Virus record (IMG/VR): IMGVR_UViG_3300031344_000002
Location: 1 to 64,000 of that record
Reading direction: 5' to 3' (one strand)
Length of the DNA: 64,000 nucleotides
Made by a program: the position numbers and the translations under genes. Positions 2,902 through 47,876 of the stretch are shown piece by piece. Every line of letters begins with the position of its first letter. Position 1 is the stretch's first letter. The notes beneath the pieces were generated by a model, which ran no database searches, had not been told where the DNA came from, and worked only from the letters and a program-made list of their open reading frames with translations.

Positions 2902-3269
2902 GGTGTTAAACCCTTCCAATTTAGATTAGTTTCCACCCACCACTAGTTGATATTGTTACAAAACCTTGGTGTTAAACCCTTCCAATTTAGGTTGGTTTCC
3001 ACCCCATTTCAATTCCTGCCTCTACAATTGCACGGTGTTAAACCCTTCCAATTTAGATTAGTTTCCACCATCTTCAATGTTTCCTACCTCATGTTTATTG
3101 GGTGTTAAACCCTTCCAATTTAGATTAGTTTCCACCATAATCACCAATTTTTGAGCTATACAGATGCGGTGTTAAACCCTTCCAATTTAGATTAGTTTCC
3201 ACCCCTGAAGGAGAATATTTGAAGGGATTGGTTGGTGTTAAACCCTTCCAATTTAGATTAGTTTCCACC
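2902..3269 (-). CRISPR. Orphan CRISPR-like array: 6 x 36-bp repeats, 5 unique spacers (30,30,31,31,30 bp)
   Basis: Plus-strand repeat GGTGTTAAACCCTTCCAATTTAGATTAGTTTCCACC starts at 2902, 2968 (2 mismatches), 3034, 3101, 3168 and 3234. Spacers are unrelated to each other. Repeat ends are complementary (GGTG...CACC, AAAC/GTTT). Minus-strand form resembles type VI-B repeats. Confidence 0.85.
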
Positions 3270-3625
3270 CAATCTTGAATGAAATCCCTGATTTGCTCGT
3301 AGTTAAGACCAAATCTTACTTCAAAAATTTGCCAAATAAGTGAATATTTTACCCAAAGTCTGCCATTTTTCCAATCCTGCTGAAATAACCAACAATTATT
3401 ATTAGAATCTGGATGATATAAACCATCTAATTTATAATAAGTTATTTCTTTTTCACCAGTAATTTTAGCTACAGTGTTATTAAACATTTCAAATAAGAAA
3501 TCTGACATTGCTTTAGATTTATCATCCTTATTTACAATGGGTTTAAATTTGATTAATTCAAAAGTAGAATTATCTTTATCAATTTCAAACCCATCAGGTA
3601 CGTTAATCTTTATTTCTTTTTCCAT
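3125..3625 (-). CDS. Hypothetical protein whose C-terminus is encoded by the array repeats
   Basis: N-terminal MEKEIKINVPDGFEIDKDNSTFELIKFK motif, recalled from Bacteroidota phage proteins. VETNLNWKGLTP occurs twice (repeats at 3234 and 3168); stop falls inside the repeat at 3101. Confidence 0.8.
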   Translation of the reverse strand: MEKEIKINVPDGFEIDKDNSTFELIKFKPIVNKDDKSKAMSDFLFEMFNNTVAKITGEKEITYYKLDGLYHPDSNNNCWLFQQDWKNGRLWVKYSLIWQIFEVRFGLNYEQIRDFIQDWVETNLNWKGLTPTNPFKYSPSGVETNLNWKGLTPHLYSSKIGDYGGN

Positions 3626-11671: not shown

Positions 11672-13681
11672 TTAAATATTAATACCAAAAGTTTTTTCAA
11701 ATTTCATGTTACCACAATCATAAATTTTATATATTTTATTGTCTAAAATGTTTTCACAAATTGATTTATTTTTATCATAATTTTTTAATTTAATAATATT
11801 TCCTTTTCTAAAATTAAAACGATGCTGTCTTAATTTTTCATTTATATTAAAATATGTATATGTTGGTTCATTAACACTAATCAATTGAAATCCTAATTGT
11901 TTATATAAATTACCTTGACTATATCTTCTATCAGCAAAAGATATTATATTTTCGGGTTGATATGTATTTATAAAATATTTTAATAATTTACTTGCACCAC
12001 CAGTTATTTTAGTGTTTAGTTTATTACAAAATCTATTTAAATTATAATAATTTTTATTATTTTCGTGATTACCTAATCCAATTCTCATTTTTTCAAAAGT
12101 CATAATCGACACCAATTCATTATTATAAAATAATCCAATTTTAATATTACTACCAACAAAACCTTGTAAATGATTGTTATTTAAAAAACTATGAATTAAT
12201 TCATTATCATTAATTTCTTTAATTTGACATTTACGAGCAAAGATTTTATTCTCAATAATACCTAATTTAGATTTTATAATACTTTTAATAATTTCTTTTT
12301 TATGTATCCATTCATCTTCAAAAATGTGAAGTAATTGAATTCCTTGTTTTTCACATTCAACTGTTTTATTTAGATGATAATTTTTATCCTTAAATAATTC
12401 TGAATGCCAATATAATCCATTAAATTCGATACCTAATTTATAATCAGGAAGATAAATATCAATTTCTTGTTTATTTTTTAATATTGGTATGTTTTTTATA
12501 ATTGTTTTAATATTTAATTTATTATTAATAAAATCACGAATTTCATTTTCTAATATCGATGCATTTTCAGAAATGGGATTACATTTTGTACAAATATTTT
12601 CATGTTTATTGAAAATAAGTCTTGAATATAATAATGATTTAGAAATTTCAAAATAATTATGAATTTTACAATAATTTTTAATTATAACAAAATGATTATT
12701 AATTTTTATATCGTTTGAATTAATATTAAGTAAATTTGAATATTTTTCTTTAAAATTATCATTGATTACGTTGTGTATTTTATTAATTACATCTATGGAT
12801 TTAGATGGATTATCTACACCATATTTTAGTATGGAAGTTATTTTACTTTTATCTCTATTATTATAATTTTCATCACCATATCTTATTTTTTTTGTATTTT
12901 TTACATCATCTTTATATTCTTGAGTACTACTATATGACGTATGATTATATTTTTTTAAATTTGTTTGTTTTATTTTTTCTTTAACTTTTTCATTTTGAAT
13001 TGAATATTCAACGCCATATTTTTTTAAGTTAGTTTGTTTTGTTTGTTCTTTAATTGTTTCGTTTTGAATTGGATGTTCAACACCATATTTTTTTAAATTA
13101 GTTTGTTTTGCTTTATTATTAATTATTTTATTCTGCATTGGATTTTCAACATTATATCTTTTTAAATTAGTTTGTTTAACTTTTTCTTGTTGAGATTTTA
13201 ATTTAAGATGATGTTCAACACCATATCGTTCTAAATTAGTTTGTTTACTTTTTTCTTTAATACTATCTAATTGTTGTGGATGTTCAACACCATATTTTTT
13301 TAAATTAGTTTGTTTTATTTGTTCTCTTTTTTCTTTAGAAAGTAATGTATATTTAAATCCAAAATTTTTCATTGATGTTTTTTCTCTTTTGATTTTAATA
13401 TTATTGTCTTTTCCAATACATTGCATTGAACAATATTTTGAAAATCCTTCACTAATTTTTTTAAATTTAACTGGTTTACCACATATTACACAAATAGGCG
13501 GTTTGGATAAATCATTTAATATTAAATAAAGCATTGCACCAAATGAAATATTATAGTTTTTAAATTTGTTATAAATTAAAACATATAAATTATAATAATT
13601 TTTTTTAAAAAACGATTCTGTTAATCTTCTTTTAATAATAATATTATCATTTTTTACGATTTCAAGTATTTTTTCCTTCAT
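11672..13681 (-). CDS. Free-standing putative homing endonuclease with KxTNLKKYGV repeats
   Basis: CxxC motifs, about 9 repeats of 23 aa, EIDIYLPDYKLGIEFNGLYWHS nuclease-like core, C-terminal IYDCGNMKF. Confidence 0.75.
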   Translation of the reverse strand: MKEKILEIVKNDNIIIKRRLTESFFKKNYYNLYVLIYNKFKNYNISFGAMLYLILNDLSKPPICVICGKPVKFKKISEGFSKYCSMQCIGKDNNIKIKREKTSMKNFGFKYTLLSKEKREQIKQTNLKKYGVEHPQQLDSIKEKSKQTNLERYGVEHHLKLKSQQEKVKQTNLKRYNVENPMQNKIINNKAKQTNLKKYGVEHPIQNETIKEQTKQTNLKKYGVEYSIQNEKVKEKIKQTNLKKYNHTSYSSTQEYKDDVKNTKKIRYGDENYNNRDKSKITSILKYGVDNPSKSIDVINKIHNVINDNFKEKYSNLLNINSNDIKINNHFVIIKNYCKIHNYFEISKSLLYSRLIFNKHENICTKCNPISENASILENEIRDFINNKLNIKTIIKNIPILKNKQEIDIYLPDYKLGIEFNGLYWHSELFKDKNYHLNKTVECEKQGIQLLHIFEDEWIHKKEIIKSIIKSKLGIIENKIFARKCQIKEINDNELIHSFLNNNHLQGFVGSNIKIGLFYNNELVSIMTFEKMRIGLGNHENNKNYYNLNRFCNKLNTKITGGASKLLKYFINTYQPENIISFADRRYSQGNLYKQLGFQLISVNEPTYTYFNINEKLRQHRFNFRKGNIIKLKNYDKNKSICENILDNKIYKIYDCGNMKFEKTFGINI
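12790..13385 (-). repeat. Coding tandem repeat (about 69-bp unit, K-Q-T-N-L-K-K-Y-G-V)
   Basis: Degenerate in-frame repeats inside 11672..13681; boundaries approximate. Confidence 0.85.
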
Positions 13682-17462: not shown

Positions 17463-19046
17463 ATGGAAAATATTAAAAATTTTTTTCTTACCAACAATAA
17501 ATCTGGGTATAAAACCAATGAAAAATGGTTAAATATTAATCATAATGATTTATATTTAAATATAATTCATTTTTCGACAAATAAAAACATTTTATTTGTC
17601 GAAAAAATTTATTTGTTTATTAATAATTTAACTGATGTTCCCAGATGCCCTATTTGCAACGAATATGTTAAATTTATTGGAACTTTAAAACGTGGATATA
17701 ATAAATACTGTTCAATAAAATGTTTAAATAAATCTGATGAGCATAAAAATAAAATAATTTCAACATTTCAAAATAAATATAATTGTAGAAGTCATAATCA
17801 GGTTGATGAAATTAAAAATAAAAAAAGAATAACATTAATTAATTCTTATGGCGTTGATAATCCAATGAAGAATAATAATATAAAAAAAAGACAAATTAAT
17901 TCTCTTATTAAAAATTATGGTGTTGATAATCCGATGAAAATTAAATCAGTTATTGAAAAAAGAAATAAAAATATTGAAATTGGTGAAGAATTAAATATTA
18001 AAAGAATGTTAAATAGAATTACTGATAATACTATTATATATATTGGGCATAATTTAGCTGAAAATAATAATGTTAATTTTCATTGTTTGAATTGCAAAAA
18101 TGATTTTAAAATAAATTCTAATTTATTAACATCACGAATTTCTAATAATACTACCATTTGTACTATTTGTAATAAAAATAAATCATTTTCTGAAATACAA
18201 AAATCGTTAGAAAATTTTATTACATCATTAAATATTAATTATGAATCAAAAAATAGGGATATTTTAAATGGATTAGAAATTGATATATATTTACCAGAAC
18301 ACAAATTAGGTATTGAAATTGATGGTTTATACTGGCATAGTAATAAATTTAAAGACAAAAATTATCACCTTAATAAAACTAATTTATGTGAACAACAAGG
18401 TATACAACTACTTCATATCTTTGAAGATGAGTGGGTTAATAAGAAAGATATTGTTAAATCTATAATTAAAAGTAAATTAAGTATTATTGAAAATAAAATA
18501 TTCGCAAGAAAATGTCATATAAAAGAAATCGATTCATTAATTTGTAATAACTTCTTAAATGACAATCACATACAAGGTAATATTAATTCTAAAGTTAAAA
18601 TTGGTTTGTTTTATAATAATGATTTGGTATCGGTTATGACTTTTGGTAAAAAGAGAGTTGCTATGGGTAATAAAACCAATATTGAGGGAGAGTATGAGAT
18701 GCATAGGTTTTGCAATAAACTTAATACTCAGGTTGTTGGTGGAGCAAGTAAGTTATTAAGTTATTTTATAAAAACCTATTTACCAAAATCAATTTTAACA
18801 TTTGCGGATAGAAGATATGGTCAAGGTAATTTATATAAACAATTAGGATTTAATTATATAAAAAATACCCCCCCCAATTATTGGTATATTTTACCGGGAG
18901 AATTGAAAAAATATTATAGATATTCATTCAGAAAAGATGTATTAGTTAAACAAGGATTTGATAAGACCAAAACAGAAAATGAAGTAATGATTGAAAGAGG
19001 ATATTTGAGAATATATGATTGTGGTAATATGAAATTCATATATTAA
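17463..19046 (+). CDS. Free-standing putative homing endonuclease (paralog of 11672..13681)
   Basis: Shared C-terminal half: EIDIYLPEHKLGIEIDGLYWHS, QGIQLLHIFEDEW, FADRRY, IYDCGNMKF; fewer YGVDNP repeats. Confidence 0.75.
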   Translation: MENIKNFFLTNNKSGYKTNEKWLNINHNDLYLNIIHFSTNKNILFVEKIYLFINNLTDVPRCPICNEYVKFIGTLKRGYNKYCSIKCLNKSDEHKNKIISTFQNKYNCRSHNQVDEIKNKKRITLINSYGVDNPMKNNNIKKRQINSLIKNYGVDNPMKIKSVIEKRNKNIEIGEELNIKRMLNRITDNTIIYIGHNLAENNNVNFHCLNCKNDFKINSNLLTSRISNNTTICTICNKNKSFSEIQKSLENFITSLNINYESKNRDILNGLEIDIYLPEHKLGIEIDGLYWHSNKFKDKNYHLNKTNLCEQQGIQLLHIFEDEWVNKKDIVKSIIKSKLSIIENKIFARKCHIKEIDSLICNNFLNDNHIQGNINSKVKIGLFYNNDLVSVMTFGKKRVAMGNKTNIEGEYEMHRFCNKLNTQVVGGASKLLSYFIKTYLPKSILTFADRRYGQGNLYKQLGFNYIKNTPPNYWYILPGELKKYYRYSFRKDVLVKQGFDKTKTENEVMIERGYLRIYDCGNMKFIY

Positions 19047-37146: not shown

Positions 37147-37419
37147 ATGAAAACAAGTATAATAAATTATCGCCAAGTAAGTGAATCTTATTTCATAACA
37201 AAACCATTAAAATTAGGTGAATTTATAGATATTTTAAAAAATTTACCTAATGATTATACTGCTGTTGCAGTAGAAGAAATATTACAATTTAATGGATTTA
37301 ATAATACACCTTATAGCACACATTATCCAATCATTGAAATTGAAGTTAATAATGATAATAAAGAAATTAAATTTTTTACTAAAAGAGCTAAACTTACCTT
37401 AATTAATGATGAAAAATAA
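37147..37419 (+). CDS. Hypothetical protein
   Basis: Start moved to 37147 because 37119-37126 (TATGTTTG) looks like a promoter. Confidence 0.6.
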   Translation: MKTSIINYRQVSESYFITKPLKLGEFIDILKNLPNDYTAVAVEEILQFNGFNNTPYSTHYPIIEIEVNNDNKEIKFFTKRAKLTLINDEK

Positions 37420-38914
37420 AATAATAGTAGTATTTTCATCACATTTGGGAGATGAAAAAAATAATGAATTTATAAATCATATTCATAATACTATTGGTGT
37501 TAATCATGATATATTATGTTACACTAATTATAATCAATATTCTCTTACTGAAGTGTATAATAAAGCAATTGTCGATTATAATAAAGATAATGTAATTATG
37601 GTATTCTGCCATCCAGATATTATAATAAAAACAAAAAATTGGGGTAAAATATTATTAAATAAATTCAATAACACTAATTTTGATATTATTGGAGTGGCTG
37701 GTACAACTTTTCTTAATGAAAATGGCTGTTGGTGGACCGATAAAAGTAAAATGTTTGGAATAGTAGAACATACGAATGGTATTAGTACGTGGGTTAGTGA
37801 ATATTCTAAAGAAATACCCAATGTAAAAGAAGTTGTAGTTATTGATGGTGTATTTATGGCTATTGATTGTAATAATATTATACATAAATTTGATGAAGAA
37901 TTTAAAGGATTTCATTTTTATGAAATTCCAATGATTACTTCCAACTACCTCGATGGTTGTAATATAGGAGTAACTACTTCAATTAGAATTTTACATAAAT
38001 CTATAGGTATGACCAATCAAGAATGGGAAAATAATAGAATTCAATTTGCTCAAAAATATAAAGATGAATTACCATTATCATTACCACCGCAATATAAAGA
38101 TATTATTTCTAAATTAACGGTAGAGCCAAAAGTTAGTGTAATTATACCAACAAAAAATAATTTTAATTTAATTAAAAATAATATTAATTCATGGAATGAA
38201 TGTGTTAATTATGAGAATTATGAAATACTTATTGCTGATACTGGTAGTAGTCCTGATATTATTAATAGATATTCGGAGATATTAAGTAATAAAGTTAAAT
38301 TAATTCGATATGATTACTATAATTTTGGTAAAATAAATAATGATATGGTGAGAAATCATGTATCTGAAGATACTGAATTAATTTTATTTTGTAATGATGA
38401 TGTTAAATTATTAAATGATGTATTAAGTAGATGTGTCGAAATTTATAATGCAAATAAAGAAAATGTTGGTACAATTGGAATTAGATTGCATTTTGCAAAT
38501 GCTGATGTACAACATTGTGGAATTACAATTGTTAGAGATACAACCGATAATATACATTTAACGCATACTGACCTTAGAAAAGCAGATAATTATTTTACTG
38601 GTGTAAATTATAATTCATTAGGAAATACAGGAGCATTTCTATTAATTAATAAACAACTATTTATTGATATTGGATATTTTAATGAATCATATATTGAATG
38701 TTTTGAAGATGTTGAATTGAATTTGAATTGTCTCATTAAAGGTAAAAAAAATATCACAGTTTGTGATGCAGTAGCATATCATTATGAATCAATATCAAGA
38801 GATAGAAGTAATGATAAATTAGAAAAGTTAAATAGGGATTATTTTGAAAGATTACATTTATTTTATCTAAAAAATAAAGAAGTATTAAATAAAATTATTA
38901 GATTGGTTAAATAA
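37406..38914 (+). CDS. Two-domain glycosyltransferase (GT2-like)
   Basis: N-terminal VFCHPD...IDGVFM..FHFY domain; C-terminal VSVIIPTKN, LFCNDD, FEDVELNL..HYESISR. Confidence 0.85.
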   Translation: MMKNKIIVVFSSHLGDEKNNEFINHIHNTIGVNHDILCYTNYNQYSLTEVYNKAIVDYNKDNVIMVFCHPDIIIKTKNWGKILLNKFNNTNFDIIGVAGTTFLNENGCWWTDKSKMFGIVEHTNGISTWVSEYSKEIPNVKEVVVIDGVFMAIDCNNIIHKFDEEFKGFHFYEIPMITSNYLDGCNIGVTTSIRILHKSIGMTNQEWENNRIQFAQKYKDELPLSLPPQYKDIISKLTVEPKVSVIIPTKNNFNLIKNNINSWNECVNYENYEILIADTGSSPDIINRYSEILSNKVKLIRYDYYNFGKINNDMVRNHVSEDTELILFCNDDVKLLNDVLSRCVEIYNANKENVGTIGIRLHFANADVQHCGITIVRDTTDNIHLTHTDLRKADNYFTGVNYNSLGNTGAFLLINKQLFIDIGYFNESYIECFEDVELNLNCLIKGKKNITVCDAVAYHYESISRDRSNDKLEKLNRDYFERLHLFYLKNKEVLNKIIRLVK

Positions 38915-38915
38915 T

Positions 38916-39731
38916 ATGGGATTTACAAAATACGGTATATGTTATAATGTTTTTGATGGTCAAGAATTACTTGAAGATTCAATACTTCAAATAAGAGATT
39001 TAGTTGATTATATTTCTGTAGTATATCAAACAGAATCATATTGGGGAAATAAGTGTTCGGAAAATTTATTAGAAATATTAAATAGATTAAAAAATGAAGG
39101 GTTAATTGATGAATTGGTTTTTTATGAGAATCAACAAACGCTTTCACCGCATTCAAATCAAATAATTAAAAGAAATTTAGGTATTAATTTATCAAGAAAA
39201 AAATATTGTACCCATCATATGTCAATGGATTGTGATGAATTTTATGTTGAAGAACAATTCGCTAAATTATTGGCATGGTATGACGAAAATCCAAATTTTG
39301 TTGGTTTTTCAGATTACAATGATTATTATAAATCTCCTTCGTATTTAATTGATAAACAACATGATACTATGGTTAGTTTATTTTTTCCAATAAAAGGAAA
39401 TAATGTTTCATTTATACAAGACTATCCTTCACCAGTGCTTGTTGACCCAACAAGAAGACCTAATTATGATAGGTATGTTATATTTCAACCAGATATTATA
39501 CAAATGCATCATATGACATTGGTTAGAAAGAACATTGACAGTAAGATAAGAAATGCAGCAAAAAGACTTAATTATAATAATGATGCTGCAATTCAAAAAC
39601 AAATTGATTTTTATAATAATTGGAATGAAGATAATTTAGTTGGTTTAAATGAATGGGGTGATTTAAAATTAAAAAAAATCGAGCCAATAATAATACTAAA
39701 TAATTTTAATAAAAATAATATAAAATTATGA
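38916..39731 (+). CDS. Glycosyltransferase-like protein (GT-A)
   Basis: MSMDCDEFY DxD motif; paralogous to the C-terminal half of 43002..44753. Confidence 0.65.
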   Translation: MGFTKYGICYNVFDGQELLEDSILQIRDLVDYISVVYQTESYWGNKCSENLLEILNRLKNEGLIDELVFYENQQTLSPHSNQIIKRNLGINLSRKKYCTHHMSMDCDEFYVEEQFAKLLAWYDENPNFVGFSDYNDYYKSPSYLIDKQHDTMVSLFFPIKGNNVSFIQDYPSPVLVDPTRRPNYDRYVIFQPDIIQMHHMTLVRKNIDSKIRNAAKRLNYNNDAAIQKQIDFYNNWNEDNLVGLNEWGDLKLKKIEPIIILNNFNKNNIKL

Positions 39732-40363
39732 ATCCGAATGAATTAGATATACTTGCATTAAAATATGGAACAGATAAGTCATCTGAGCATCATGATTATA
39801 CTAAATTTTATAATCAATTTTTTTATTCAAATAAAAATGAAGTAAAAAATGTTTTAGAAATTGGGGTTTTTCGTGGTAATTCATTGAGAATGTGGAGAGA
39901 TTATTTTATCAATGCTATGATTTATGGCATTGATATTGATATAAATTGTAAGTTTGAGGAAGAAAGAATTAAAGTATTGATTAATGACCAAATTAATACT
40001 AATATAATCAACTTATTACCAAATAATTTTGATGTTATTATTGATGATGGCGGACATCAATCAACACAACAAATTAAATCATTTGAAATATTATTTCCAA
40101 GTGTAAAATCTGGTGGCGTATATATTGTTGAAGATGCGTGTTGTTTATATTGGTCAGAATATAATATAGGTTCAAATCAAACAGCAATAGAATATTTTAA
40201 AACATTAGTTGACCACGTAAATTTTTTTGGTAGTGTAACAAATGGTTTATATCAAAGAAATCGAGAAATTATATTGAAAAATAAAGAAAATGTAAGTTTT
40301 TTTGAAAAAAATATTGATTATATTTTATTCACAAATAGTATAATTCTCATTAAGAAAATATAA
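39728..40363 (+). CDS. SAM-dependent methyltransferase (MycE/TylE-like sugar O-methyltransferase)
   Basis: KYGTDK...H.Y...Y, VLEIGV..G.SLRMW, GIDID, DVIIDDGGH, GGVYIVED. Confidence 0.8.
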   Translation: MNPNELDILALKYGTDKSSEHHDYTKFYNQFFYSNKNEVKNVLEIGVFRGNSLRMWRDYFINAMIYGIDIDINCKFEEERIKVLINDQINTNIINLLPNNFDVIIDDGGHQSTQQIKSFEILFPSVKSGGVYIVEDACCLYWSEYNIGSNQTAIEYFKTLVDHVNFFGSVTNGLYQRNREIILKNKENVSFFEKNIDYILFTNSIILIKKI

Positions 40364-40409
40364 ATTAATTAAACGAAAAAATAAGAAATAAACTAAAAAT
40401 TAATAAAAT

Positions 40410-41117
40410 ATGATAAATAGAGAAGATGTTCAAACATTTATATTCGTGCATGACCAAAACATTATTTTATCTTATGAAGAAGAAAAAATATTTAAGAACA
40501 TTGAATATACCTATGTGTTTTTAGGTACAGGTAAAACAGACATGTTATTTAATATTAAAAATATAATCTATGCCAAGGATTTACCATATAATTTAGAAAA
40601 TTATCCAAAAATGTGTTCATATTCTGGTTGGTATGTGTTATTTAAAAATAATTTAATTACCGCCAAATATGTTAATTTATTTGAATATGATATTATATTA
40701 TCTAATGATTTTATGGATAAATTAGTATTAAATATAGATGATAAAACAGATTATTATGGTTATATACAAATAGGACTTAATAGTTGTTTTTTATATAATG
40801 AAATCCAATTTGGAGAATTAAGTAAATATTATCCTAATCTTCAACTTAATATTATAAATAAAAGTAAAGAAAAAAATATTGATGTGTGGTGTGTAACAAG
40901 TAATGTTACAATGAAAAGGGAGTTTTTTTATAAATATATGTCAGATTCAGAAGATTTTTTTTATTGGGTTAAAGCAGCACCACGTGCTGGGCATGAATTA
41001 GAAAGATGTTTATCTGTATATCACATATTAAATAATGATATAATAAATGTCAAATATTTAGATAAGGAAAACGCATTAAAACATTATTATAAGAATTCAC
41101 ATAATATTAAATATTAA
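40410..41117 (+). CDS. Putative glycosyltransferase-like protein
   Basis: LFEYDII motif, GHELER; within the glycan cluster. Confidence 0.5.
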   Translation: MINREDVQTFIFVHDQNIILSYEEEKIFKNIEYTYVFLGTGKTDMLFNIKNIIYAKDLPYNLENYPKMCSYSGWYVLFKNNLITAKYVNLFEYDIILSNDFMDKLVLNIDDKTDYYGYIQIGLNSCFLYNEIQFGELSKYYPNLQLNIINKSKEKNIDVWCVTSNVTMKREFFYKYMSDSEDFFYWVKAAPRAGHELERCLSVYHILNNDIINVKYLDKENALKHYYKNSHNIKY

Positions 41118-41118
41118 A

Positions 41119-41655
41119 ATGAAATACATAAAAAATAGAAATGAAATGCTTGCACTACTTCCGAAAAAAATAGTGATTGCAGAATTAGGTGTTTTTAGAG
41201 GGGATTATAGTCAAATAATAATAGATATTATTCAGCCAAGTCATATTTATTTGGTGGATATTTTTAATGAAGGACCATCCTTTTCGGGAGATAAAGATGG
41301 TGAAAATGCAATTACGATACCAAATTTATTTGTTGAATATGAAAATTTAATAAAAAAATATAAAAAACAAAATAATGTGAGTATTATTAGAAATACTACA
41401 ACAGATTTTTTAACGAATATTAGTTCAGATATACTTCAAGCAGTTTATATAGATGCTGACCATACTTATAATGCAGTATATAATGATTTAATTAATAGTT
41501 ATAATAAAATAAAACAATATGGTTGGATAATGGGGCATGATTTTAACGGTATGGAAGTTCAACATGCTGTTAATAGATTTTGTGCTGAAAGAAATTTAGA
41601 AATTGAGTATCTTACTCAAGATAAATGTCCGAGTTATATGATAATAAAAAAATGA
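41119..41655 (+). CDS. SAM-dependent methyltransferase (Methyltransf_24-like)
   Basis: AELGVFRGD, YLVD, VYIDADHTY..V..D, G.IMGHDF. Confidence 0.85.
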   Translation: MKYIKNRNEMLALLPKKIVIAELGVFRGDYSQIIIDIIQPSHIYLVDIFNEGPSFSGDKDGENAITIPNLFVEYENLIKKYKKQNNVSIIRNTTTDFLTNISSDILQAVYIDADHTYNAVYNDLINSYNKIKQYGWIMGHDFNGMEVQHAVNRFCAERNLEIEYLTQDKCPSYMIIKK

Positions 41656-42287
41656 ATAAAAATATTTTTATAGAAATTGTTAGACCATATACAATGACAA
41701 GTGTCGAAAGAATTATTGCATTATTTGATTCTTTAGAATATATTAGAAAAAATAAAATTTCTGGTGATATTGTAGAATGCGGTGTATGGAAGGGAGGAAA
41801 TATTCTTGGAATAATAGAGTATTTAAATTATTATGAAATTTATGATAAAAATGTGTGGTTATATGACACATTTAATGGAATGACACAACCCGAAGAAATA
41901 GATATGGATTACTTCAATAGAAAGGCTATTGATATATTTCAATCAATACTATGTGTTTCATTAATTGATGAAGTTAAAAAGAATTTATCTATTTCGAAAT
42001 ATCCCAACGAAAAAATAAAATATATTATCGGGGATGTTGAAAAAACGTTAAATAATGAAATAAATTTACCAAATCAAATATCATTATTGAGATTAGATAC
42101 TGATTTTTATAAATCAACAAAAAAAGAATTAAATGTATTATTCCCAATATTATCCAAAAATGGTGTTTTAATTGTTGATGATTATGGTTATTGGCAAGGT
42201 TCTAAAAAAGCGGTTGATGAATACTTTAATGAATTTACATTAATTGAGCATATTGATGATACTGGAATAAAAATAATTAAAGAATGA
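41625..42287 (+). CDS. TylF/MycF-family sugar O-methyltransferase
   Basis: TMTS.ER, GDIVECGVWKGG, YDTFNGM, LLRLDTDFYKST, DDYGYWQG.KKAVDEY. True start is probably the internal MNKN. Confidence 0.9.
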   Translation: MSELYDNKKMNKNIFIEIVRPYTMTSVERIIALFDSLEYIRKNKISGDIVECGVWKGGNILGIIEYLNYYEIYDKNVWLYDTFNGMTQPEEIDMDYFNRKAIDIFQSILCVSLIDEVKKNLSISKYPNEKIKYIIGDVEKTLNNEINLPNQISLLRLDTDFYKSTKKELNVLFPILSKNGVLIVDDYGYWQGSKKAVDEYFNEFTLIEHIDDTGIKIIKE

Positions 42288-42955
42288 AAACATATTTAAT
42301 ATTTTTTTGCGATAAAAAATATGAAAAGAGAGAATCATATTTTTTAGTTGAATTAAAAAATATTGGTTTTGATAATATATTTTGTTATAGAAAAGAATGG
42401 TTATTAACTACTAATTTTTATGTAGAAAATAAAGAAATATTAGATATGCCAAGGGGGGCAGGATATTGGTTATGGAAACCATACATTATTATTGAAATGT
42501 TAAAGAAGATTGAAGAAGGTGATATTGTTTTTTATATGGATGCTGGTGATAGTATAAATAATTATAATATTATAAATATAATAAAAAACCATATGGTTGA
42601 TAATGATTATATGATTGCTGGTACATCTAAATGGGGATTGAATAAATATTGGACAAAAAAAGATTGTTTTGTTTTAATGGAATGTGATAATGAAATATAT
42701 CATAATGTTCCTCAAATTGAGGCAGGTACATTAGTTTTTAAAAAAACAAAAAAAAATGAAGATTTTTTAAATGAATGGTTATATTATTGTAAAAACAAAA
42801 GTATTTTAACTGATGTTTCAAATACTTTGGGTAATAATTATGATGGATTTAATGACCATAGGCATGACCAAAGTATTTTAACTAATTTAATAATAAAATA
42901 TAATATGAAACATAGTGATATATTATATTCATATATAAATTATAATAGTTATTAA
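42284..42955 (+). CDS. Putative glycosyltransferase (GT-A)
   Basis: GAGYWLWKPYII, FYMDAG, HRHDQSILT motifs. Confidence 0.7.
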   Translation: MKTYLIFFCDKKYEKRESYFLVELKNIGFDNIFCYRKEWLLTTNFYVENKEILDMPRGAGYWLWKPYIIIEMLKKIEEGDIVFYMDAGDSINNYNIINIIKNHMVDNDYMIAGTSKWGLNKYWTKKDCFVLMECDNEIYHNVPQIEAGTLVFKKTKKNEDFLNEWLYYCKNKSILTDVSNTLGNNYDGFNDHRHDQSILTNLIIKYNMKHSDILYSYINYNSY

Positions 42956-43001
42956 CTATAGAATTATAATAAGCATTATATTAAGGTAAAAAAAATTAGA
43001 A

Positions 43002-44753
43002 ATGAATAATGATATTACAAGACCCGATATTAGATTATCTAATGATGAACGTACTAAATTAAGGGGTGGTAATTCTCATAATATCCAAGATTCGAAAAAA
43101 ACATTAAAACCATTTATCCAATTACCTAATTGTCCATTGGAGTGTATTATCACACGACAAATTAAAGATAATCCTTTTGAAGCAGTAAGAACAATGATAT
43201 TATCTAAATATCAAAATCAATTTAAATATAATAACACATTAGTTATTTTAGGTTATAATATAGATTTTAATATTTTAGAATATCGAGAAAAATATCCAAA
43301 TTATAAAATCGTTATATATCAATTAGAACAACTTTATGATAATAAAAGTCAATGGTATGATATAAATAATAAAAATGGAGCAGTTGTTAATAGAACAAAA
43401 CACATACAAAAATCATTAAGCGAATGTGATGAAATTTGGGATTATGATTTAGATAATATTAATTTTTTAAAAGCAGAGGGATTTAATAATATAATACACG
43501 TTCCTTTGGAATATACAGAGGATTTAATTAAAATAAATAATATTATAAATCCAAAATATGAATTATTATTTTTAGGTTCTGTTAACGATAAGAGAGCAAA
43601 AATATTATCATTATTATGTGATAAATATAATATTTGTATACTTGCTCCAGAAGTTGATTGTAGTAAATATAAAAATTATAATTTTGGAAAATGTATGAAT
43701 CCTTCAGCATTTGGCGATGATTTATATGAATATGTTTTTAATTCAAAAATTATTATTAATTTACATTATTATGAATCTTGTTTACAAGAACAAGTTAGAC
43801 TTTTTGAATTATTAATAAATGGAAGAGTAATTGTATCAGAAAAATCTATAAGAAATTATTTTGGTAATTTAATATATGAATTTGATGATGAAAAAGATAT
43901 GTTTAAAAAAATTTATTTTTTATTGAAAAATAATATATGGAAAAATAATAGTATATCGAAAAAATTTAAAAATAAGGAATATAAAAGATTTAGAGTCGGT
44001 ATTGCGTATAATACCTTTTATGGTTTAGAATTGATTGAAAAATCAATAAAATCTATAAAAAACTATGCTGATTATATCATTATAGTTCACCAAAAAATTG
44101 GATTTAATGGAAGTCCTGAACCAGAAGAAAATAAACAAATTTTAAAGCATTTAATAGATAATAAATTGGTTGATGATGTTGTTTATTATGATAATAATGA
44201 TAATGATATAGAACGTGGGGTTTTAAATAAAAGGAATATTGGTTTAGATTATTGTAAAAAAAATGGTTGCACATTTATAATGCCAATGGATTCAGATGAG
44301 CGATATAATGTGAACGAATTAATTACTGAAATTAATTTCATGTACGATAATAATATAGATACATTATATTCTCCAATTTATTCGTATTATTATGATGAAA
44401 ATTATTATTTTAAAGATACATATTTTGTTGCGAGTGTATTTAAAATTGATAATAGAAGATTTGAAGTTATTAAATCTTCTGTATTAGTAGACCATGTTAG
44501 AAAAATGAATGAAGGTACATATAAAATATCTGAAATGTATATGCATCATTATACATATTTAAAAAATTCTTTTTCGATTAAAATAAATAATAGTGTAGCA
44601 TCAACAACAGATGATTCATATATAACTATTGGTATGAAAAAAATACGTGATTATTTAATGTCATGGTCAGAAGGTGATGAAGCACTTGTATTTATAAACG
44701 ATATAATAAATAATGGAATAATACTTACAAAAGTAAATTTATTAAAAAAATAA
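43002..44753 (+). CDS. Two-domain glycosyltransferase-like fusion
   Basis: N-terminal GT-B-like part (LLFLGSVN.KR, KIIINLH..E.VRLF.LL..G..IVSE); C-terminal MPMDSDERY domain. Confidence 0.7.
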   Translation: MNNDITRPDIRLSNDERTKLRGGNSHNIQDSKKTLKPFIQLPNCPLECIITRQIKDNPFEAVRTMILSKYQNQFKYNNTLVILGYNIDFNILEYREKYPNYKIVIYQLEQLYDNKSQWYDINNKNGAVVNRTKHIQKSLSECDEIWDYDLDNINFLKAEGFNNIIHVPLEYTEDLIKINNIINPKYELLFLGSVNDKRAKILSLLCDKYNICILAPEVDCSKYKNYNFGKCMNPSAFGDDLYEYVFNSKIIINLHYYESCLQEQVRLFELLINGRVIVSEKSIRNYFGNLIYEFDDEKDMFKKIYFLLKNNIWKNNSISKKFKNKEYKRFRVGIAYNTFYGLELIEKSIKSIKNYADYIIIVHQKIGFNGSPEPEENKQILKHLIDNKLVDDVVYYDNNDNDIERGVLNKRNIGLDYCKKNGCTFIMPMDSDERYNVNELITEINFMYDNNIDTLYSPIYSYYYDENYYFKDTYFVASVFKIDNRRFEVIKSSVLVDHVRKMNEGTYKISEMYMHHYTYLKNSFSIKINNSVASTTDDSYITIGMKKIRDYLMSWSEGDEALVFINDIINNGIILTKVNLLKK

Positions 44754-44815
44754 TGTAATTATTTTGATATTTATGAAAGAAATTAACTTTAAATTATAAT
44801 AAAATTTTAATTAAT

Positions 44816-46231
44816 ATGGTGGGTATATTAATAGTTAATTTAAATAATCTTGAATTAACAAAAAATTGTATTGATTCTTTAAAAAAACAAATAAATCAAG
44901 AATTTAGAATATATTTATTTGACCAAAATTCTAATGAACAAGGTACTTTTGAATATTTAAATGAATGTGAAAACAATAATATGTTTGTTTATAGAAATTC
45001 AGAAAATGTTCCACTTAATTATATTTGGAATAATTTTAAATATATTTGTGGTTATGAATATTTATGCTTTTTAAATAATGATATTGTGGTATCAAATACA
45101 TTTGTTGATGATATTATTAAAATATTTATTAACGAACCAACAGTTGGTGTAGTAATTCATGTAACAAATAATAATGATTATATAAAATCAAAAAATAATC
45201 TTGAATATGCAATATTTAATAATAATAATAATGTATTATATCAAGGATGGGATTTTGCGATTAGAAATAGTATAATTCCTGATATTCCAAAACAGTTAAC
45301 AATTTTTGGTGGGGATGATTATATTTTTGCTAAAATAAGTTCGCAGGGTTATAAAGTTGCGATGGCATTTAGTTCACCAATTATTCATTTTAAAGCAAAA
45401 ACTAGAGTAAAAATAATTAATATTGGTGAAATTCAAAGAAATGATGGAATTGCTTATGCAGAATTATTTAGAACTGAAAATCTTACATCACTATGTGCAA
45501 CCATTCATAATGGTATTTGCAGTGCAACACCAGAACCAAATATGAAATTAATACAAAATAAAAATTGTGTTTTTACTGCATTTATAGGGGATTATGATTT
45601 GCCATTATCAACCACGCATACAAAACTTCCTGATTGGGATTATATTTGTTTTACTGATAATAAAGAAATTAAATCAGATTTTTGGAGAGTAATATATATC
45701 GAAAATAATCATAATAATTTCCTTTATAATATTAAATTAGGGAAATATTTTAAAACAAATTTTTATAAATATTTATTGAGTTATGAAAATTTATTATGGT
45801 TGGATGAAAGAATTACTATTACCAATAATATAAATAATTATCTTAATTATCTTAATTATAAAGATATTGTTTTTTTAAAACATCCAGACACATTAAATAT
45901 TTTAGAGGAATTTGAGAGAGTTATTAACAGTAAGAGAGAATCTACCAAAATGGTTGATATTATTCGAAATCGTTATGCGGAATTAGGATATGATTATAGT
46001 AATGGTTTGATTTCATCTGGAGTTATTTTATTTAAAAATAATGAAAAAACAATAAAATTTTTTAAGGAATGGTGGAATGAAATCGAACATTACTCAAGTA
46101 GTGACCAATTATCTGCAAATTTTGTATTGTGGAAAAATCCTGAATTAAATTATGTTATGTTAAGTGGAATTTTAAATAATCAAGATTTTATGCGACAGCC
46201 AAGAACTACACAAGTATTTAAACATGAGTGA
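44816..46231 (+). CDS. GT2 plus DUF616-like glycosyltransferase fusion
   Basis: CFLNNDIVV, FGGDDY; second domain CVFTAFIGDYD, WDYICFTD, KHP, SSDQLS.NFVLW. Confidence 0.8.
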   Translation: MVGILIVNLNNLELTKNCIDSLKKQINQEFRIYLFDQNSNEQGTFEYLNECENNNMFVYRNSENVPLNYIWNNFKYICGYEYLCFLNNDIVVSNTFVDDIIKIFINEPTVGVVIHVTNNNDYIKSKNNLEYAIFNNNNNVLYQGWDFAIRNSIIPDIPKQLTIFGGDDYIFAKISSQGYKVAMAFSSPIIHFKAKTRVKIINIGEIQRNDGIAYAELFRTENLTSLCATIHNGICSATPEPNMKLIQNKNCVFTAFIGDYDLPLSTTHTKLPDWDYICFTDNKEIKSDFWRVIYIENNHNNFLYNIKLGKYFKTNFYKYLLSYENLLWLDERITITNNINNYLNYLNYKDIVFLKHPDTLNILEEFERVINSKRESTKMVDIIRNRYAELGYDYSNGLISSGVILFKNNEKTIKFFKEWWNEIEHYSSSDQLSANFVLWKNPELNYVMLSGILNNQDFMRQPRTTQVFKHE

Positions 46232-46958
46232 ATTATTTTATAAAAAGGAATTTGATTATTTTTTAAATAAAATAAAACTTAATCAACATTTTAAATATTC
46301 AAGATATAATGATGGTGAATTAATCGCAATAATTGGAAATTCTCCAAATTCTACCAATTGTGATGGTCATCAATATTTTCCTAAAATGTCTATTGAGTTA
46401 AGACAGACATTGCTGAGTTATAAATATAATGAAGATTATGTTTTAGAATCTTTTGATTATTGGTATAATTTATTACCACATGTCAAAAATATACTTAATG
46501 AATTAAAGCTAATAAATTCTGAACTTACCTTTTTACATACAGATTTTATTAGAATTGCTCATGAACAGAATCCTGAACAATTTATACAATTATTAGAAAC
46601 ATTAAAAACAAAAAAACTTATAATTGTCGGTCCTTTTTATCTTAAGGAATTATGTAGATTTTTTAATTTTACGTATGTTGAAGTATTATTAAAAAATTGT
46701 TATTTGGATAAGGATAATATTATTAAAGAAATTATAAAAATTAATAACTTATCCAATGATAATTATTATTTGTTTAGCGCAAGTATGCCAACAAAAGTTA
46801 TTATTGATGTATTTAAAGAAGATAATAAGAATACATATTTAGATTGGGGAAGTGTTTGGGACACATTTTTTATATCACCACAATATAGTTTTATTAGAAA
46901 ACGCTCAACATCAAACCATAATAAATATTTGGAAATATATAAAGATTATTTAATATAA
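46224..46958 (+). CDS. GT-D-fold-like protein
   Basis: YSRYNDGEL..I, IIVGP, LFSASMPTKV, YLDWGS..D pattern. Confidence 0.55.
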   Translation: MSELFYKKEFDYFLNKIKLNQHFKYSRYNDGELIAIIGNSPNSTNCDGHQYFPKMSIELRQTLLSYKYNEDYVLESFDYWYNLLPHVKNILNELKLINSELTFLHTDFIRIAHEQNPEQFIQLLETLKTKKLIIVGPFYLKELCRFFNFTYVEVLLKNCYLDKDNIIKEIIKINNLSNDNYYLFSASMPTKVIIDVFKEDNKNTYLDWGSVWDTFFISPQYSFIRKRSTSNHNKYLEIYKDYLI

Positions 46959-47003
46959 AAGACAATTATTTTACTAAAGTATTTATTATTAAAAAATTAG
47001 AAT

Positions 47004-47639
47004 ATGAAAATCGCTAATGTTATTTTTGAAAAAGAATTAGTAAATCATACAAAGGTTGATTATATAAATTATTATAATGAACCTATTATATATGATACAT
47101 TAGACAAAACTATACCAACATTATATGTGGGTTGGTCATTTATGAAAGCAAGCAATCCCGATAATCTTATAATTCAAAATGCGGATATTCTTAAAAAGAG
47201 AATTATAAGTAATGAACTATATTGGGAATGTAATTTTGAAGAAGGTAAGGCATCCCATGTTAAAGGAGTGGATTCTTTTGTAAATTTTGCTCCACAATTG
47301 TATTTTACACCAAAATATTCTTATGTTAACTTAGACCCAATTTTTTTCCAATTAAAAGATGTTCAAGACATCATGGATGTTCTTCCTAAAAACATTAAAG
47401 CAAGTTATAATTTCAGAAACGAAATGATATATTTATTATGTGATAATAATATATATGGTATAAATTTAAACATGTTTCAGTTTTTCCTATTTAATATAGA
47501 AGCGATTAAAAATAGTTTGTCATTAAGAACAATAACAACATATGATGATATTGATGGTAGCATATATCAATCATATTATAAATTATTTCCAAATTTTACT
47601 TTTCTTAAAAGATATCTTGTTGTGATATTGTCAAAATAG
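47004..47639 (+). CDS. Hypothetical protein
   Basis: Late motif at 46978. Confidence 0.75.
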   Translation: MKIANVIFEKELVNHTKVDYINYYNEPIIYDTLDKTIPTLYVGWSFMKASNPDNLIIQNADILKKRIISNELYWECNFEEGKASHVKGVDSFVNFAPQLYFTPKYSYVNLDPIFFQLKDVQDIMDVLPKNIKASYNFRNEMIYLLCDNNIYGINLNMFQFFLFNIEAIKNSLSLRTITTYDDIDGSIYQSYYKLFPNFTFLKRYLVVILSK

Positions 47640-47675
47640 ATATAACATAGTATTTATTATTAAAAAATAAATATT

Positions 47676-47861
47676 ATGGAAAATAAAATAGAAAAAGCAC
47701 TTGAAGATTTTGTTGAAACCCCTATAACTAATGAAGAATTAGAAAAGAAAGTAAAAAAAGATAAAGAAAAAATAATAAAATCTGATTTTACTATCATAGA
47801 ACGTGTTGATAAAATAATTATTGCTGAAAATGGAAAGCAACTTCTTCGTGAAGTATATTAA
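47676..47861 (+). CDS. Small hypothetical protein
   Basis: Late motif at 47649. Confidence 0.7.
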   Translation: MENKIEKALEDFVETPITNEELEKKVKKDKEKIIKSDFTIIERVDKIIIAENGKQLLREVY

Positions 47862-47876
47862 TAACATTCATATATT

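What the first reader, a model, noticed from the sequence alone, without database searches (positions are those of the whole stretch)
3101..3330. The array repeat is also the C-terminal coding sequence of the upstream gene: a cassette of alternative protein tails?
Seen: the 166-aa ORF runs seamlessly from a helix (YEQIRDFIQDW) into repeat-encoded VETNLNWKGLTP. It reads through a 30-nt spacer in frame (66 nt = 22 codons), repeats the motif and stops only after a 31-nt spacer shifts the frame. Each spacer, placed after the first repeat, gives a different short tail: TNPFKYSPSG.., HLYSSKIGDYGGN*, NKHEVGNIEDGGN*, CNCRGRN*, RFCNNIN*, and KRNNIINNSII* after the last repeat. There is no leader between gene and array. 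Inference: either the repeat arose from the gene's own 3' end and recombination or spacer gain swaps C-terminal tails, or the protein is functionally coupled to the array (for example by binding the repeat hairpin or acting in its expansion). I know no named system with this gene-fused array layout.
Basis: partly seen in the sequence, partly recalled or inferred. Interest (0 to 1): 0.85.

Follow-up and report, generated by a model that had tools for sequence, protein, structure and literature searches.

The report
Phage gene ending in CRISPR-like array
A small phage gene of unknown function uses its own last 36 bases as the first repeat of a short CRISPR-style repeat-spacer array, and this fusion is kept across a large, undescribed family of phage genes with no CRISPR-associated genes nearby, so it looks like a new way for viruses to carry such arrays.

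Summary
On the minus strand, ORF 3625..3125 runs in frame into the first of six 36-nt repeats (2902-3269), separated by unique spacers of 30, 31, 31, 30 and 30 nt.

This is not an accident of this genome. All 48 close homologues end in the repeat-encoded peptide. A profile search finds 789 clusters, whose sampled members keep a related C-terminal motif. More than 30 loci carry the same fused 36+30 array.

- **Unit:** the duplicated unit is exactly the last 36 nt of the coding sequence.
- **Turnover:** near-identical phages differ by whole units next to the gene, and gene-distal repeats are often decayed.
- **Constraint:** the repeat evolves as coding sequence, but two blocks (TGGAAGGG, TAACACC) are also fixed at synonymous sites.
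- **Resemblance:** those blocks are shared with Flavobacterium 36-nt/30-nt arrays, which I read as type VI-B.

No cas gene, host array, spacer target, protein family or fold match was found.

Best reading (about 0.45): a cas-less, CRISPR-type mini-array seeded by a dual-coding gene end, expanded by a host integrase and used against host CRISPR immunity or rival phages. The variable protein tails are a by-product. An autonomous protein-array system is not excluded.

The parts
3233..3625 (-). Conserved part of the gene (131 aa, Met to the terminal Thr-Pro). The family is uncharacterised: a beta-sheet plus three helices.
   Evidence: ORF list and translation. 48 homologues with E <= 1.6e-15. 789 clusters found by profile search. 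AlphaFold model with pLDDT 80.6. No Pfam, NCBIfam or PHROG family and no PDB or BFVD fold match.
3125..3232 (-). Read-through part of the ORF: the rest of spacer 1, repeat 2 and spacer 2, ending at the stop codon read inside repeat 3. It encodes the accidental tail TNPFKYSPSG-VETNLNWKGLTP-HLYSSKIGDYGGN.
   Evidence: Translation. Tails differ in every homologue.
3234..3269 (-). Repeat 1, which is also the last 36 nt of the coding sequence (from the G of the Trp119 codon to the CC of the Pro131 codon). It is dual-coding.
   Evidence: same unit boundaries in 23 lineages. (coding-type variation plus nucleotide-fixed blocks).
3204..3233 (-). Spacer 1 (30 nt)
   Evidence: No match outside its own phage in viral contigs.
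3168..3203 (-). Repeat 2
3137..3167 (-). Spacer 2 (31 nt). It shifts the frame.
3101..3136 (-). Repeat 3
3070..3100 (-). Spacer 3 (31 nt)
3034..3069 (-). Repeat 4
3004..3033 (-). Spacer 4 (30 nt)
   Evidence: No match outside its own phage.
2968..3003 (-). Repeat 5. Its variant (ACC AAC instead of ACT AAT) is identical to the repeat of this phage's two other arrays near 153 kb of the contig.
2938..2967 (-). Spacer 5 (30 nt)
2902..2937 (-). Repeat 6 (gene-distal end of the array)

Best explanation
This is a cas-less, CRISPR-type mini-array whose leader and first repeat lie inside a conserved phage gene. The last 36 nt of the gene both encode the protein's C-terminal 12 residues and serve as the founding repeat.

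New units (a 30-nt piece of foreign DNA plus a copy of the 36-nt unit) are added next to the gene. That reaction has the product geometry of Cas1-Cas2 spacer integration. I infer that a host integrase of the Bacteroidota II-C/VI-B kind does it in trans.

The array is transcribed as the 3' extension of the gene's mRNA. I infer that the resulting guide-repeat RNAs engage a host CRISPR effector, either as decoys that displace host guides or as guides against competing phages. The co-expressed protein would be a partner in this counter-defence.

The variable protein tails are a side effect.

Shown: the anatomy, family-wide conservation, unit-precise turnover, dual constraint and absence of local cas genes. 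Inferred: the integrase, the effector and the benefit.
For: **Anatomy:** six 36-nt repeats and spacers of 30-31 nt, with 0 copies expected by chance.

**Conservation of the fusion:**
- All 48 homologues end in the repeat-encoded motif. Those that read through show a second copy that co-varies with the first.
- More than 30 distinct loci from viral, metagenome and genome collections have arrays of 1-6 repeats with a period of 65-67 nt. The arrays are always fused in frame to the gene on the same strand.
- The profile search gives 789 clusters. Sampled distant members keep the motif and the +22-residue second copy.

**Integrase-type signature:**
- The duplicated unit has the same exact boundaries in 23 lineages.
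- Spacer lengths are 30 nt (39 spacers), 29 nt (5) and 31 nt (5).
- Spacers are depleted in stop triplets on both strands, as real genomic DNA is, and show no strand bias.
- Spacers are richer in GC than their carrier phage: 0.346 versus 0.311, P 0.03.

**Polarity and turnover:**
- Gene-distal repeats are degenerate in several loci.
- L045/L005 carry three spacers where L048 carries only the distal one. The flanks are 1017/1019 and 152/152 identical.

**Dual constraint:**
- Third codon positions hold 51% of the column entropy (P 0.024). pN/pS is 0.37 in the ORF frame against 0.71-0.77 in the other frames.
- Thr130 is ACA in 23 of 23 sequences, against 23% ACA at other Thr codons. Lys127 is AAG in 16 of 16, against 14% elsewhere.
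- Three of five array-less lineages have lost these nucleotide blocks.

**Link to known arrays:**
- The fixed blocks are the ones shared with the 36-nt/30-nt Flavobacterium repeats of PMC5395568 Table 4. The similarity has z 4.5-5.4 with 0 of 500 shuffles as good, in the orientation of the gene. There is no similarity to the F. columnare II-C repeat.
- The 36-nt repeat with 30-nt spacer, transcription from the leader and the guide-repeat order are type VI-B traits (PMC13187072; PMC8092290).
- VI-B arrays are filled in trans by II-C Cas1-Cas2.

**Plausibility of the benefit:**
- An RNA made from the leader plus the first repeat can deplete real guides and weaken Cas13b defence.
- Phage repeat mimics sit in operons with anti-CRISPR genes.
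- In a 223-kb relative the unit lies among Tad4 and ART-type accessory genes.
Against: - No cas gene lies in the 61 window ORFs or in the roughly 20-kb flanks of eight other loci.
- The large unassigned ORFs have no HEPN motif.
- No free-standing array with this repeat was found in viral contigs. None was found in one genome per 185,579 species with my degenerate pattern, nor among called ORFs. Known viral mini-arrays have host-identical repeats.
- None of the spacers searched matched anything: five window spacers against cultured phages, four against IMG/VR, and all 45 then known against the loci then held.
- The whole-repeat hairpin that Cas13b recognises is not conserved. No consensus structure was found, and only 8 of 26 variants close their ends.
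- Identity to true VI-B-type repeats is only about 55-60%.
- Repeats diverge widely across the superfamily together with the protein. That fits a private partner better than mimicry of one host system.
- In L059 all 8 spacers are open and in frame, which hints at selection on translation.
Confidence: 0.45

Rival explanations
1. This is an autonomous, previously unknown phage system. The small protein itself is the specific partner of its own array. It would bind the repeat as RNA or DNA and use the spacers as guides, or it would direct unit insertion, with no Cas protein involved.
For: - The repeat family occurs only at the 3' end of this gene family in every collection searched.
- Repeats and protein co-diverge across 789 clusters while the 36+30 geometry stays fixed.
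- No cas genes lie near any locus.
- The protein belongs to no known family or fold.
- Its last helix is partly encoded by the repeat.
Against: - A core of about 95 residues is small for an integrase or an effector.
- No catalytic motif was recognised.
- The precise 36-nt duplication with a 30 +/-1 nt insert is known only from Cas1-Cas2.
- The similarity of the nucleotide-fixed blocks to VI-B-type repeats points to existing CRISPR machinery.
Confidence: 0.2
2. The arrays are scars without function. The gene's 3' end happens to resemble a leader-repeat junction, and a host Cas1-Cas2 occasionally integrates spacers there. This would be ectopic, 'neo-CRISPR' integration, which I cite from my own knowledge of work on E. 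coli Cas1-Cas2.
For: - The arrays are short (at most 6 repeats).
- No targets were found.
- Identical arrays occur in several samples.
- 7 of about 32 units have no array.
Against: - The fusion persists across a whole superfamily, with several arrays per genome.
- A rare codon (AAG) and ACA are fixed at synonymous sites only in this segment, and they decay in array-less lineages. That indicates selection for the nucleotide signal.
- Untranslated repeats stay identical.
Confidence: 0.15
3. The function is at the peptide level. The conserved 12-residue motif flanks hypervariable 10-residue peptides, as in multi-core peptide precursors or polyproteins, or the array is a cassette store for alternative C-terminal tails.
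For: - The motif is under protein-level constraint.
- The period of 66 nt equals 22 codons.
- In L059, five units and 8 of 8 spacers form one 760-aa ORF. This frame has 1 stop, against 34 and 55 in the other two frames.
- Several other distant members are multi-unit ORFs.
- Near-identical phages carry different tails.
Against: - 10 of 49 spacers are 29 or 31 nt.
- In the window, translation ends after repeat 2. In L005 it ends six codons into spacer 1, yet the downstream repeats are identical or nearly so.
- Stops are not specifically avoided in the ORF frame (33, 31 and 22 of 49 spacers open in the three frames).
- Tail lengths are scattered.
- No modifying enzymes lie nearby.
Confidence: 0.1
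4. The repeats are protein-binding sites, as in iterons of a replication origin or partition site that lie in or next to the gene of their binding protein.
For: - The repeats are regularly spaced and lie in or next to a gene.
- In temperate-like relatives the unit sits in early, replication and recombination regions.
Against: - Spacers between identical repeats are wholly unrelated, and units move as modules between arrays. Iteron spacers diverge by mutation.
- The period of 66 nt and repeat of 36 nt are far from usual iterons.
- There are three units per genome.
Confidence: 0.03

Closest known systems
Virus-borne CRISPR mini-arrays and solitary repeat units (RNA anti-CRISPRs, Racr)
   Same: Short arrays or single repeats in phage genomes without cas genes. 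They often lie beside or in an operon with anti-defence genes, and they are thought to use or block the host's Cas proteins (PMC11656645, PMC10651486).
   Different: - Known cases are intergenic, have repeats identical or at least 90% identical to a host array, and have spacers that hit related viruses.
- Here the first repeat is coding sequence of a conserved protein, no host counterpart was found and no spacer target was found.
- The published survey masked ORFs before searching and found no type VI case.
Type VI-B (Cas13b) CRISPR arrays of Bacteroidota, filled in trans by II-C Cas1-Cas2
   Same: - 36-nt repeat, 30-nt spacers and transcription from the leader side.
- The guide-repeat order makes the first repeat productive.
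- Shared sequence blocks (G.TGGAA, TTGGAAGGG, ACA.C) with z about 5 against two Flavobacterium repeats.
- A leader-distal motif (ACACC here, ACAAC there) that is fixed at the nucleotide level.
   Different: - No Cas13b was found.
- Identity is about 55-60%.
- The inner CCCUU:AAGGG stem and the whole-repeat hairpin are not kept.
- The leader is a protein-coding gene.
Ectopic ('neo-CRISPR') spacer integration at repeat-like genomic sites (own knowledge, not retrieved here)
   Same: An ordinary sequence next to a leader-like context becomes a repeat by duplication when a spacer is integrated.
   Different: Here the site is conserved and reused across hundreds of gene lineages, and it carries nucleotide-level selection.
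Hypervariable peptide cassettes flanked by conserved recognition sequences (cyanobactin-type precursors; own knowledge)
   Same: Conserved flanks identical at the DNA level alternate with unrelated short inserts inside an ORF.
   Different: The frame is broken and stops are frequent here. Repeats persist beyond the ORF. No maturation enzymes are present.
TIGR and VIPR guide arrays
   Same: Non-CRISPR tandem arrays of fixed and variable segments that guide a neighbouring protein (bioRxiv 10.64898/2026.10.21.760802).
   Different: Their periods are 18 nt and 5 nt, and their partner proteins have different folds. The period of 66 nt here falls in the CRISPR band.

Membership tests
CRISPR array (generic) | Identical direct repeats of 23-50 nt separated by unique spacers of similar, near-constant length | tested here: met
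   Six 36-nt repeats with spacers of 30-31 nt. 49 unique spacers of 29-31 nt across related loci.
CRISPR array (generic) | Growth by unit-precise duplication of the repeat at one (leader) end, with decay of the far repeat | tested here: met
   Same 36-nt boundaries in 23 lineages. Degenerate gene-distal repeats. L045 versus L048 differ by two gene-proximal units within identical flanks. Loss instead of gain cannot be excluded.
CRISPR array (generic) | Spacers derived from foreign genetic elements (protospacer matches) | tested here: inconclusive
   No match in cultured phages, in IMG/VR (four spacers tried) or in the held loci. The spacers do look like natural DNA: stop triplets are depleted on both strands and GC is above that of the carrier.
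CRISPR-Cas locus | Adjacent cas genes (cas1, cas2, effector) | tested here: not met
   PADLOC and Pfam scans of 61 window ORFs. Precomputed Pfam annotation of the flanks in L044, L045, L059, L060, L062, L063 and L064 shows no cas adaptation or effector module; the only related entry is an IS605-type TnpB about 9 kb upstream in L059, which I take as an insertion element. No R....H motif in the large unassigned ORFs. The other 154 kb of the phage contig was not readable, apart from about 14 kb around the other arrays.
Viral mini-array | Repeat identical to that of a CRISPR array of the host | tested here: not met
   The genome scan found only another gene-fused copy plus three chance hits. No Rfam CRISPR-DR hit. 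The limit is one degenerate pattern and one genome per species, and the host is unknown.
Viral mini-array | Spacers target related viruses | tested here: not met
   The 45 spacers then known were compared with the loci then held and the window. No match longer than 18 nt was found.
Type VI-B array | 36-nt repeat, 30-nt spacers, transcription from the leader into the array | tested here: met
   Geometry. The array always lies downstream of the gene on the same strand. No terminator is predicted between them. Reference values come from PMC13187072.
Type VI-B array | Repeat folds as one hairpin over its whole length, which Cas13b recognises | tested here: not met
   The window repeat can fold this way (-8.3 kcal/mol, z -2.25). 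The family has no consensus structure. Only 8 of 26 variants close their ends, whereas the two Flavobacterium repeats fold at -10.9 and -12.2 kcal/mol.
Type VI-B array | Sequence relatedness to bona fide VI-B repeats | tested here: inconclusive
   z 4.5 and 5.4 against shuffles for two Flavobacterium repeats. There are only two related comparators, identity is about 55-60%, and their assignment to the VI-B locus rests on PMC8092290 plus my own knowledge.
Type VI-B array | A Cas13b in the phage or its host | not testable with these tools
RNA anti-CRISPR (solitary repeat unit) | Repeat mimic with at least 90% identity to a typed CRISPR repeat, outside ORFs | tested here: not met
   No such repeat was found, and the element lies inside an ORF. 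Single-repeat forms of the gene do exist.
Multi-core peptide precursor or tail cassette | All units in frame and open, with maturation enzymes nearby | tested here: not met
   31-nt spacers and stops in the window. 10 of 49 spacers are not multiples of 3. The feature is met only in L059.

The most novel reading that the evidence does not exclude
A widespread, self-contained phage module in which a small protein and a CRISPR-like guide array are one genetic unit. The protein's last 12 codons are the array's founding repeat, and the protein (not a Cas protein) is the array's specific partner. This would be a new class of array-encoded guide system, or a living example of how CRISPR-type repeats can be born from coding sequence.
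Probability: 0.2. Interest if true: 0.95.

Novelty: new variant of a known kind. Interest (0 to 1): 0.8.

Why it matters
If the best reading holds, this would be:
- the first viral mini-array or repeat mimic related to RNA-targeting type VI systems;
- the first case where a CRISPR repeat is at the same time conserved protein-coding sequence;
- a case that published surveys would tend to miss, because they mask ORFs or analyse only intergenic sequence before looking for repeats.

It gives a concrete, testable case of how an array can arise and persist without its own leader or cas genes. It also shows how adaptation machinery might be drawn to foreign DNA.

It flags an abundant uncharacterised phage protein family (789 clusters at 50% identity) as a candidate partner of CRISPR components.

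If the protein turns out to be the array's own partner, it would be a new kind of guide system.

Tried and rejected
- **Chance or a lost stop codon:** rejected by family-wide conservation.
- **Known RNA family:** no Rfam match for the repeat.
- **tracrRNA-like anti-repeat:** no complement longer than 13 nt in the window.
- **Cas13 or other cas genes:**
  - none by PADLOC or Pfam;
  - NCBIfam gave nothing for the four large ORFs scanned;
  - no HEPN motif in the 775, 842, 900 and 1068-aa ORFs;
  - the 775-aa ORF has no relative in the PDB.
- **Protein identity:**
  - no significant Pfam, NCBIfam or PHROG hit for the window protein (Ntox23 at E 0.018 is below threshold), and none by PADLOC for any window ORF;
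  - no shared Pfam or PHROG family among 55 relatives;
  - no PDB sequence match and no PDB or BFVD fold match;
  - absent from 50,697 cultured phage records.
- **Spacer targets:**
  - the window itself, with up to 7 mismatches;
  - all held loci;
  - cultured phages;
  - IMG/VR with four spacer cores.
  All were negative.
- **Host arrays:** genome scan, a looser scan of viral contigs, and protein searches with the array translated on both strands. Only gene-fused copies were found.
- **Conserved partner gene:** the neighbours differ between loci.
- **Selection for open spacers:** no effect specific to the ORF frame.
- **Literature:** seven full-text searches found no description of a gene-fused array.

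Full report
**1. The observation**

The window is the first 64 kb of a 218-kb uncultured phage contig. It has about 26% GC and encodes a T4-like sheath and baseplate, thymidylate synthase and a DnaB-type helicase.

On the minus strand a 36-nt repeat occurs six times between 3269 and 2902, with 0 copies expected by chance. Unique spacers of 30, 31, 31, 30 and 30 nt separate the copies.

ORF 3625..3125 has no stop before the array. It reads ...YEQIRDFIQDW-VETNLNWKGLTP (repeat 1), then spacer 1, then the same 12 residues (repeat 2). It stops after the 31-nt spacer 2 shifts the frame.

**2. The fusion is a family trait, not an accident**

A word-based search found 48 true homologues of 98-167 aa. 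Seventeen further hits share only the N-terminal 30 residues.

In the alignment every homologue ends in the repeat-encoded motif. Twelve read through into a second copy, and that copy changes together with the first: for example VEANLGWKSLTP twice, and VEKNTKWSGITP twice.

I fetched the DNA of 8 viral, 29 metagenomic and several further loci.
- Arrays have 1-6 repeats and a period of 65-67 nt.
- They are always fused in frame to the 3' end of the gene on the same strand.
- This phage has two more units in tandem near 153 kb of its contig.
- Seven of about 32 units have the motif but no second repeat.

A profile search of 1.84 billion representatives gives 789 clusters with E <= 1e-3.
- Distant members (about 25-40% identity) keep a C-terminal [VLM]E..[LF]..KG[LFV]TP motif followed by a short arbitrary tail.
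- 26 of 131 show a second copy exactly 22 residues later.
- In a 148-kb phage with 42% GC, five units lie head to tail, again with 36-nt repeats and 30-nt spacers.

**3. How the array behaves**

- **Precise unit.** The duplicated unit has the same boundaries in 23 lineages, from the G of the Trp codon to the CC of the Pro codon.
- **Spacer lengths.** They are 30 nt (39 spacers), 29 nt (5) and 31 nt (5).
- **Spacer origin.** Spacers are mutually unrelated, somewhat richer in GC than their phage, and depleted in stop triplets on both strands as natural DNA is.
- **Decay.** Gene-distal repeats are often degenerate.
- **Turnover.** Two assemblies with 1017/1019 and 152/152 identical flanks differ by two whole units at the gene-proximal end: sp10, sp11, sp12 against sp12 alone.
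- **Exchange.** Repeat 5 of the window array carries the variant of the phage's other arrays, so units move between arrays.

These are the hallmarks of CRISPR arrays and of ruler-type spacer integration. The gene takes the place of the leader.

**4. What constrains the repeat**

Across 35 repeat variants the variable columns follow codon phase.
- Third positions hold 51% of the entropy in first repeats (permutation P 0.024).
- pN/pS is 0.37 in the ORF frame against 0.71 and 0.77 in the other frames.
- The four-fold site of Thr122 uses all four bases.

So the 12 residues are selected as protein. The AlphaFold model (pLDDT 80.6) has its last helix running into them.

On top of this, two blocks are fixed as nucleotides.
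- Lys127 is AAG in 16 of 16 sequences, although AAG is 14% of the other Lys codons.
- Thr130 is ACA in 23 of 23, against 23% elsewhere.
- The third base of Leu129 never varies.
- Three of five array-less lineages have lost these blocks.

There is no conserved RNA hairpin.

**5. Relation to known systems**

Nothing was found in the window or in the flanks of eight related loci:
- no cas adaptation or effector module; the only related entry is an IS605-type TnpB about 9 kb upstream in L059, which I take as an insertion element;
- no anti-repeat in the window;
- no HEPN motif in the window's large unassigned ORFs.

The repeat matches no Rfam family. In three collections it occurs only at the end of this gene.

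Published viral mini-arrays have host-identical repeats and spacers against related viruses (PMC11656645). Neither feature could be shown here.

The geometry and the two nucleotide-fixed blocks match the 36-nt/30-nt arrays of Flavobacterium (PMC5395568 Table 4). The similarity has z 4.5-5.4 in the gene's orientation, and there is no similarity to the II-C repeat of F. columnare.

In Bacteroidota such VI-B arrays lack cas1 and cas2 and are filled in trans by the II-C module. Recognition is thought to involve a leader-distal GTTGT motif (PMC8092290). The corresponding end here reads GGTGT and is the invariant ACACC.

In type VI-B the guide precedes the repeat, so the leader plus the first repeat can yield an extraneous guide RNA. 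When this RNA is produced it depletes real guides and weakens defence (PMC13187072).

Phage repeat mimics are known to lie in operons with anti-CRISPR genes. The survey that found them masked ORFs and saw no type VI case (PMC10651486).

**6. Interpretation**

The most economical account is a cas-less CRISPR-type mini-array seeded by a dual-coding gene end. A host integrase expands it, and the array is transcribed with the gene. It would act on a host CRISPR effector as a decoy or as a source of guides, and the protein would be a co-expressed partner. I put this at 0.45.

The enzyme, the effector and the benefit are all inferred.

The missing hairpin, the missing host array and the wide co-divergence of protein and repeat keep an autonomous protein-array system alive (0.2).

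A scar of ectopic integration (0.15) is hard to square with the synonymous-site fixation.

A peptide-level role (0.1) is contradicted in the window by frame shifts, stops and intact untranslated repeats. However, the 760-aa five-unit ORF with 8 of 8 open spacers shows that translation through arrays may matter in some lineages.

Iterons (0.03) do not fit the modular, unrelated spacers.

**7. Novelty**

The protein family has no Pfam, NCBIfam or PHROG model and no structural relative. It is absent from cultured phages.

Seven full-text searches found no description of an array fused to a coding sequence. The paper library is incomplete, so prior description cannot be excluded.

I file it as a new variant of a known kind (viral mini-CRISPR arrays). 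There is a real chance that it is something further removed.

Noticed in passing
window 12947-13325 (inside ORF 11672..13681, minus strand): A 69-nt tandem repeat of 5.5 copies lies inside a 669-aa DUF7487 protein, so it is a 23-residue protein repeat. A second DUF7487 protein (17463-19046) also carries Mom-like and restriction-endonuclease-like domains.
   Followed up: no
window 3536-3625 (N-terminal 30 codons of the gene); proteins P0049-P0065: The N-terminal module MEKEIKINVPDGFEIDK...FKP recurs at 76-90% identity on otherwise unrelated proteins of 129-168 aa. A DNA-level match also occurs in a crAss-like phage from human faeces. It looks like a shuffled N-terminal module, perhaps a targeting or packaging signal. 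Other members of the array-fused family have different N-termini.
   Followed up: partly
L005 4354-4727 and 5771-6012 (same phage contig, about 153 kb): The phage carries two further gene-array units in tandem, with 6 and 4 repeats. Their repeat variant also appears as repeat 5 of the window array (2968-3003), which implies exchange of units between arrays.
   Followed up: yes
L059 10001-12283: Five family units with their arrays are fused into a single 760-aa ORF in a 148-kb phage. All 8 spacers are open and in frame, and units 2-5 have no start codon of their own. An IS605-type TnpB gene lies 9 kb upstream.
   Followed up: partly
L064 1572-9015 (223-kb relative): The unit lies in an island of small accessory genes that includes Tad4, an ART-PolyVal ADP-ribosyltransferase, a nucleoside deoxyribosyltransferase-like gene and a tyrosine integrase. 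This suggests an anti-defence neighbourhood.
   Followed up: no
window 37406-48629: A cluster of glycosyltransferases, a TylF-type O-methyltransferase and other methyltransferases lies in a phage genome. It could serve DNA or surface-sugar modification.
   Followed up: no
L049-L053 3357-3590: In one lineage the in-gene repeat has mutated (Val-Glu to Gly-Lys) while the downstream repeats keep the older sequence. The same four-repeat array is found unchanged in the five samples whose DNA could be read. Arrays can therefore be static, and the gene copy can drift away from them.
   Followed up: partly
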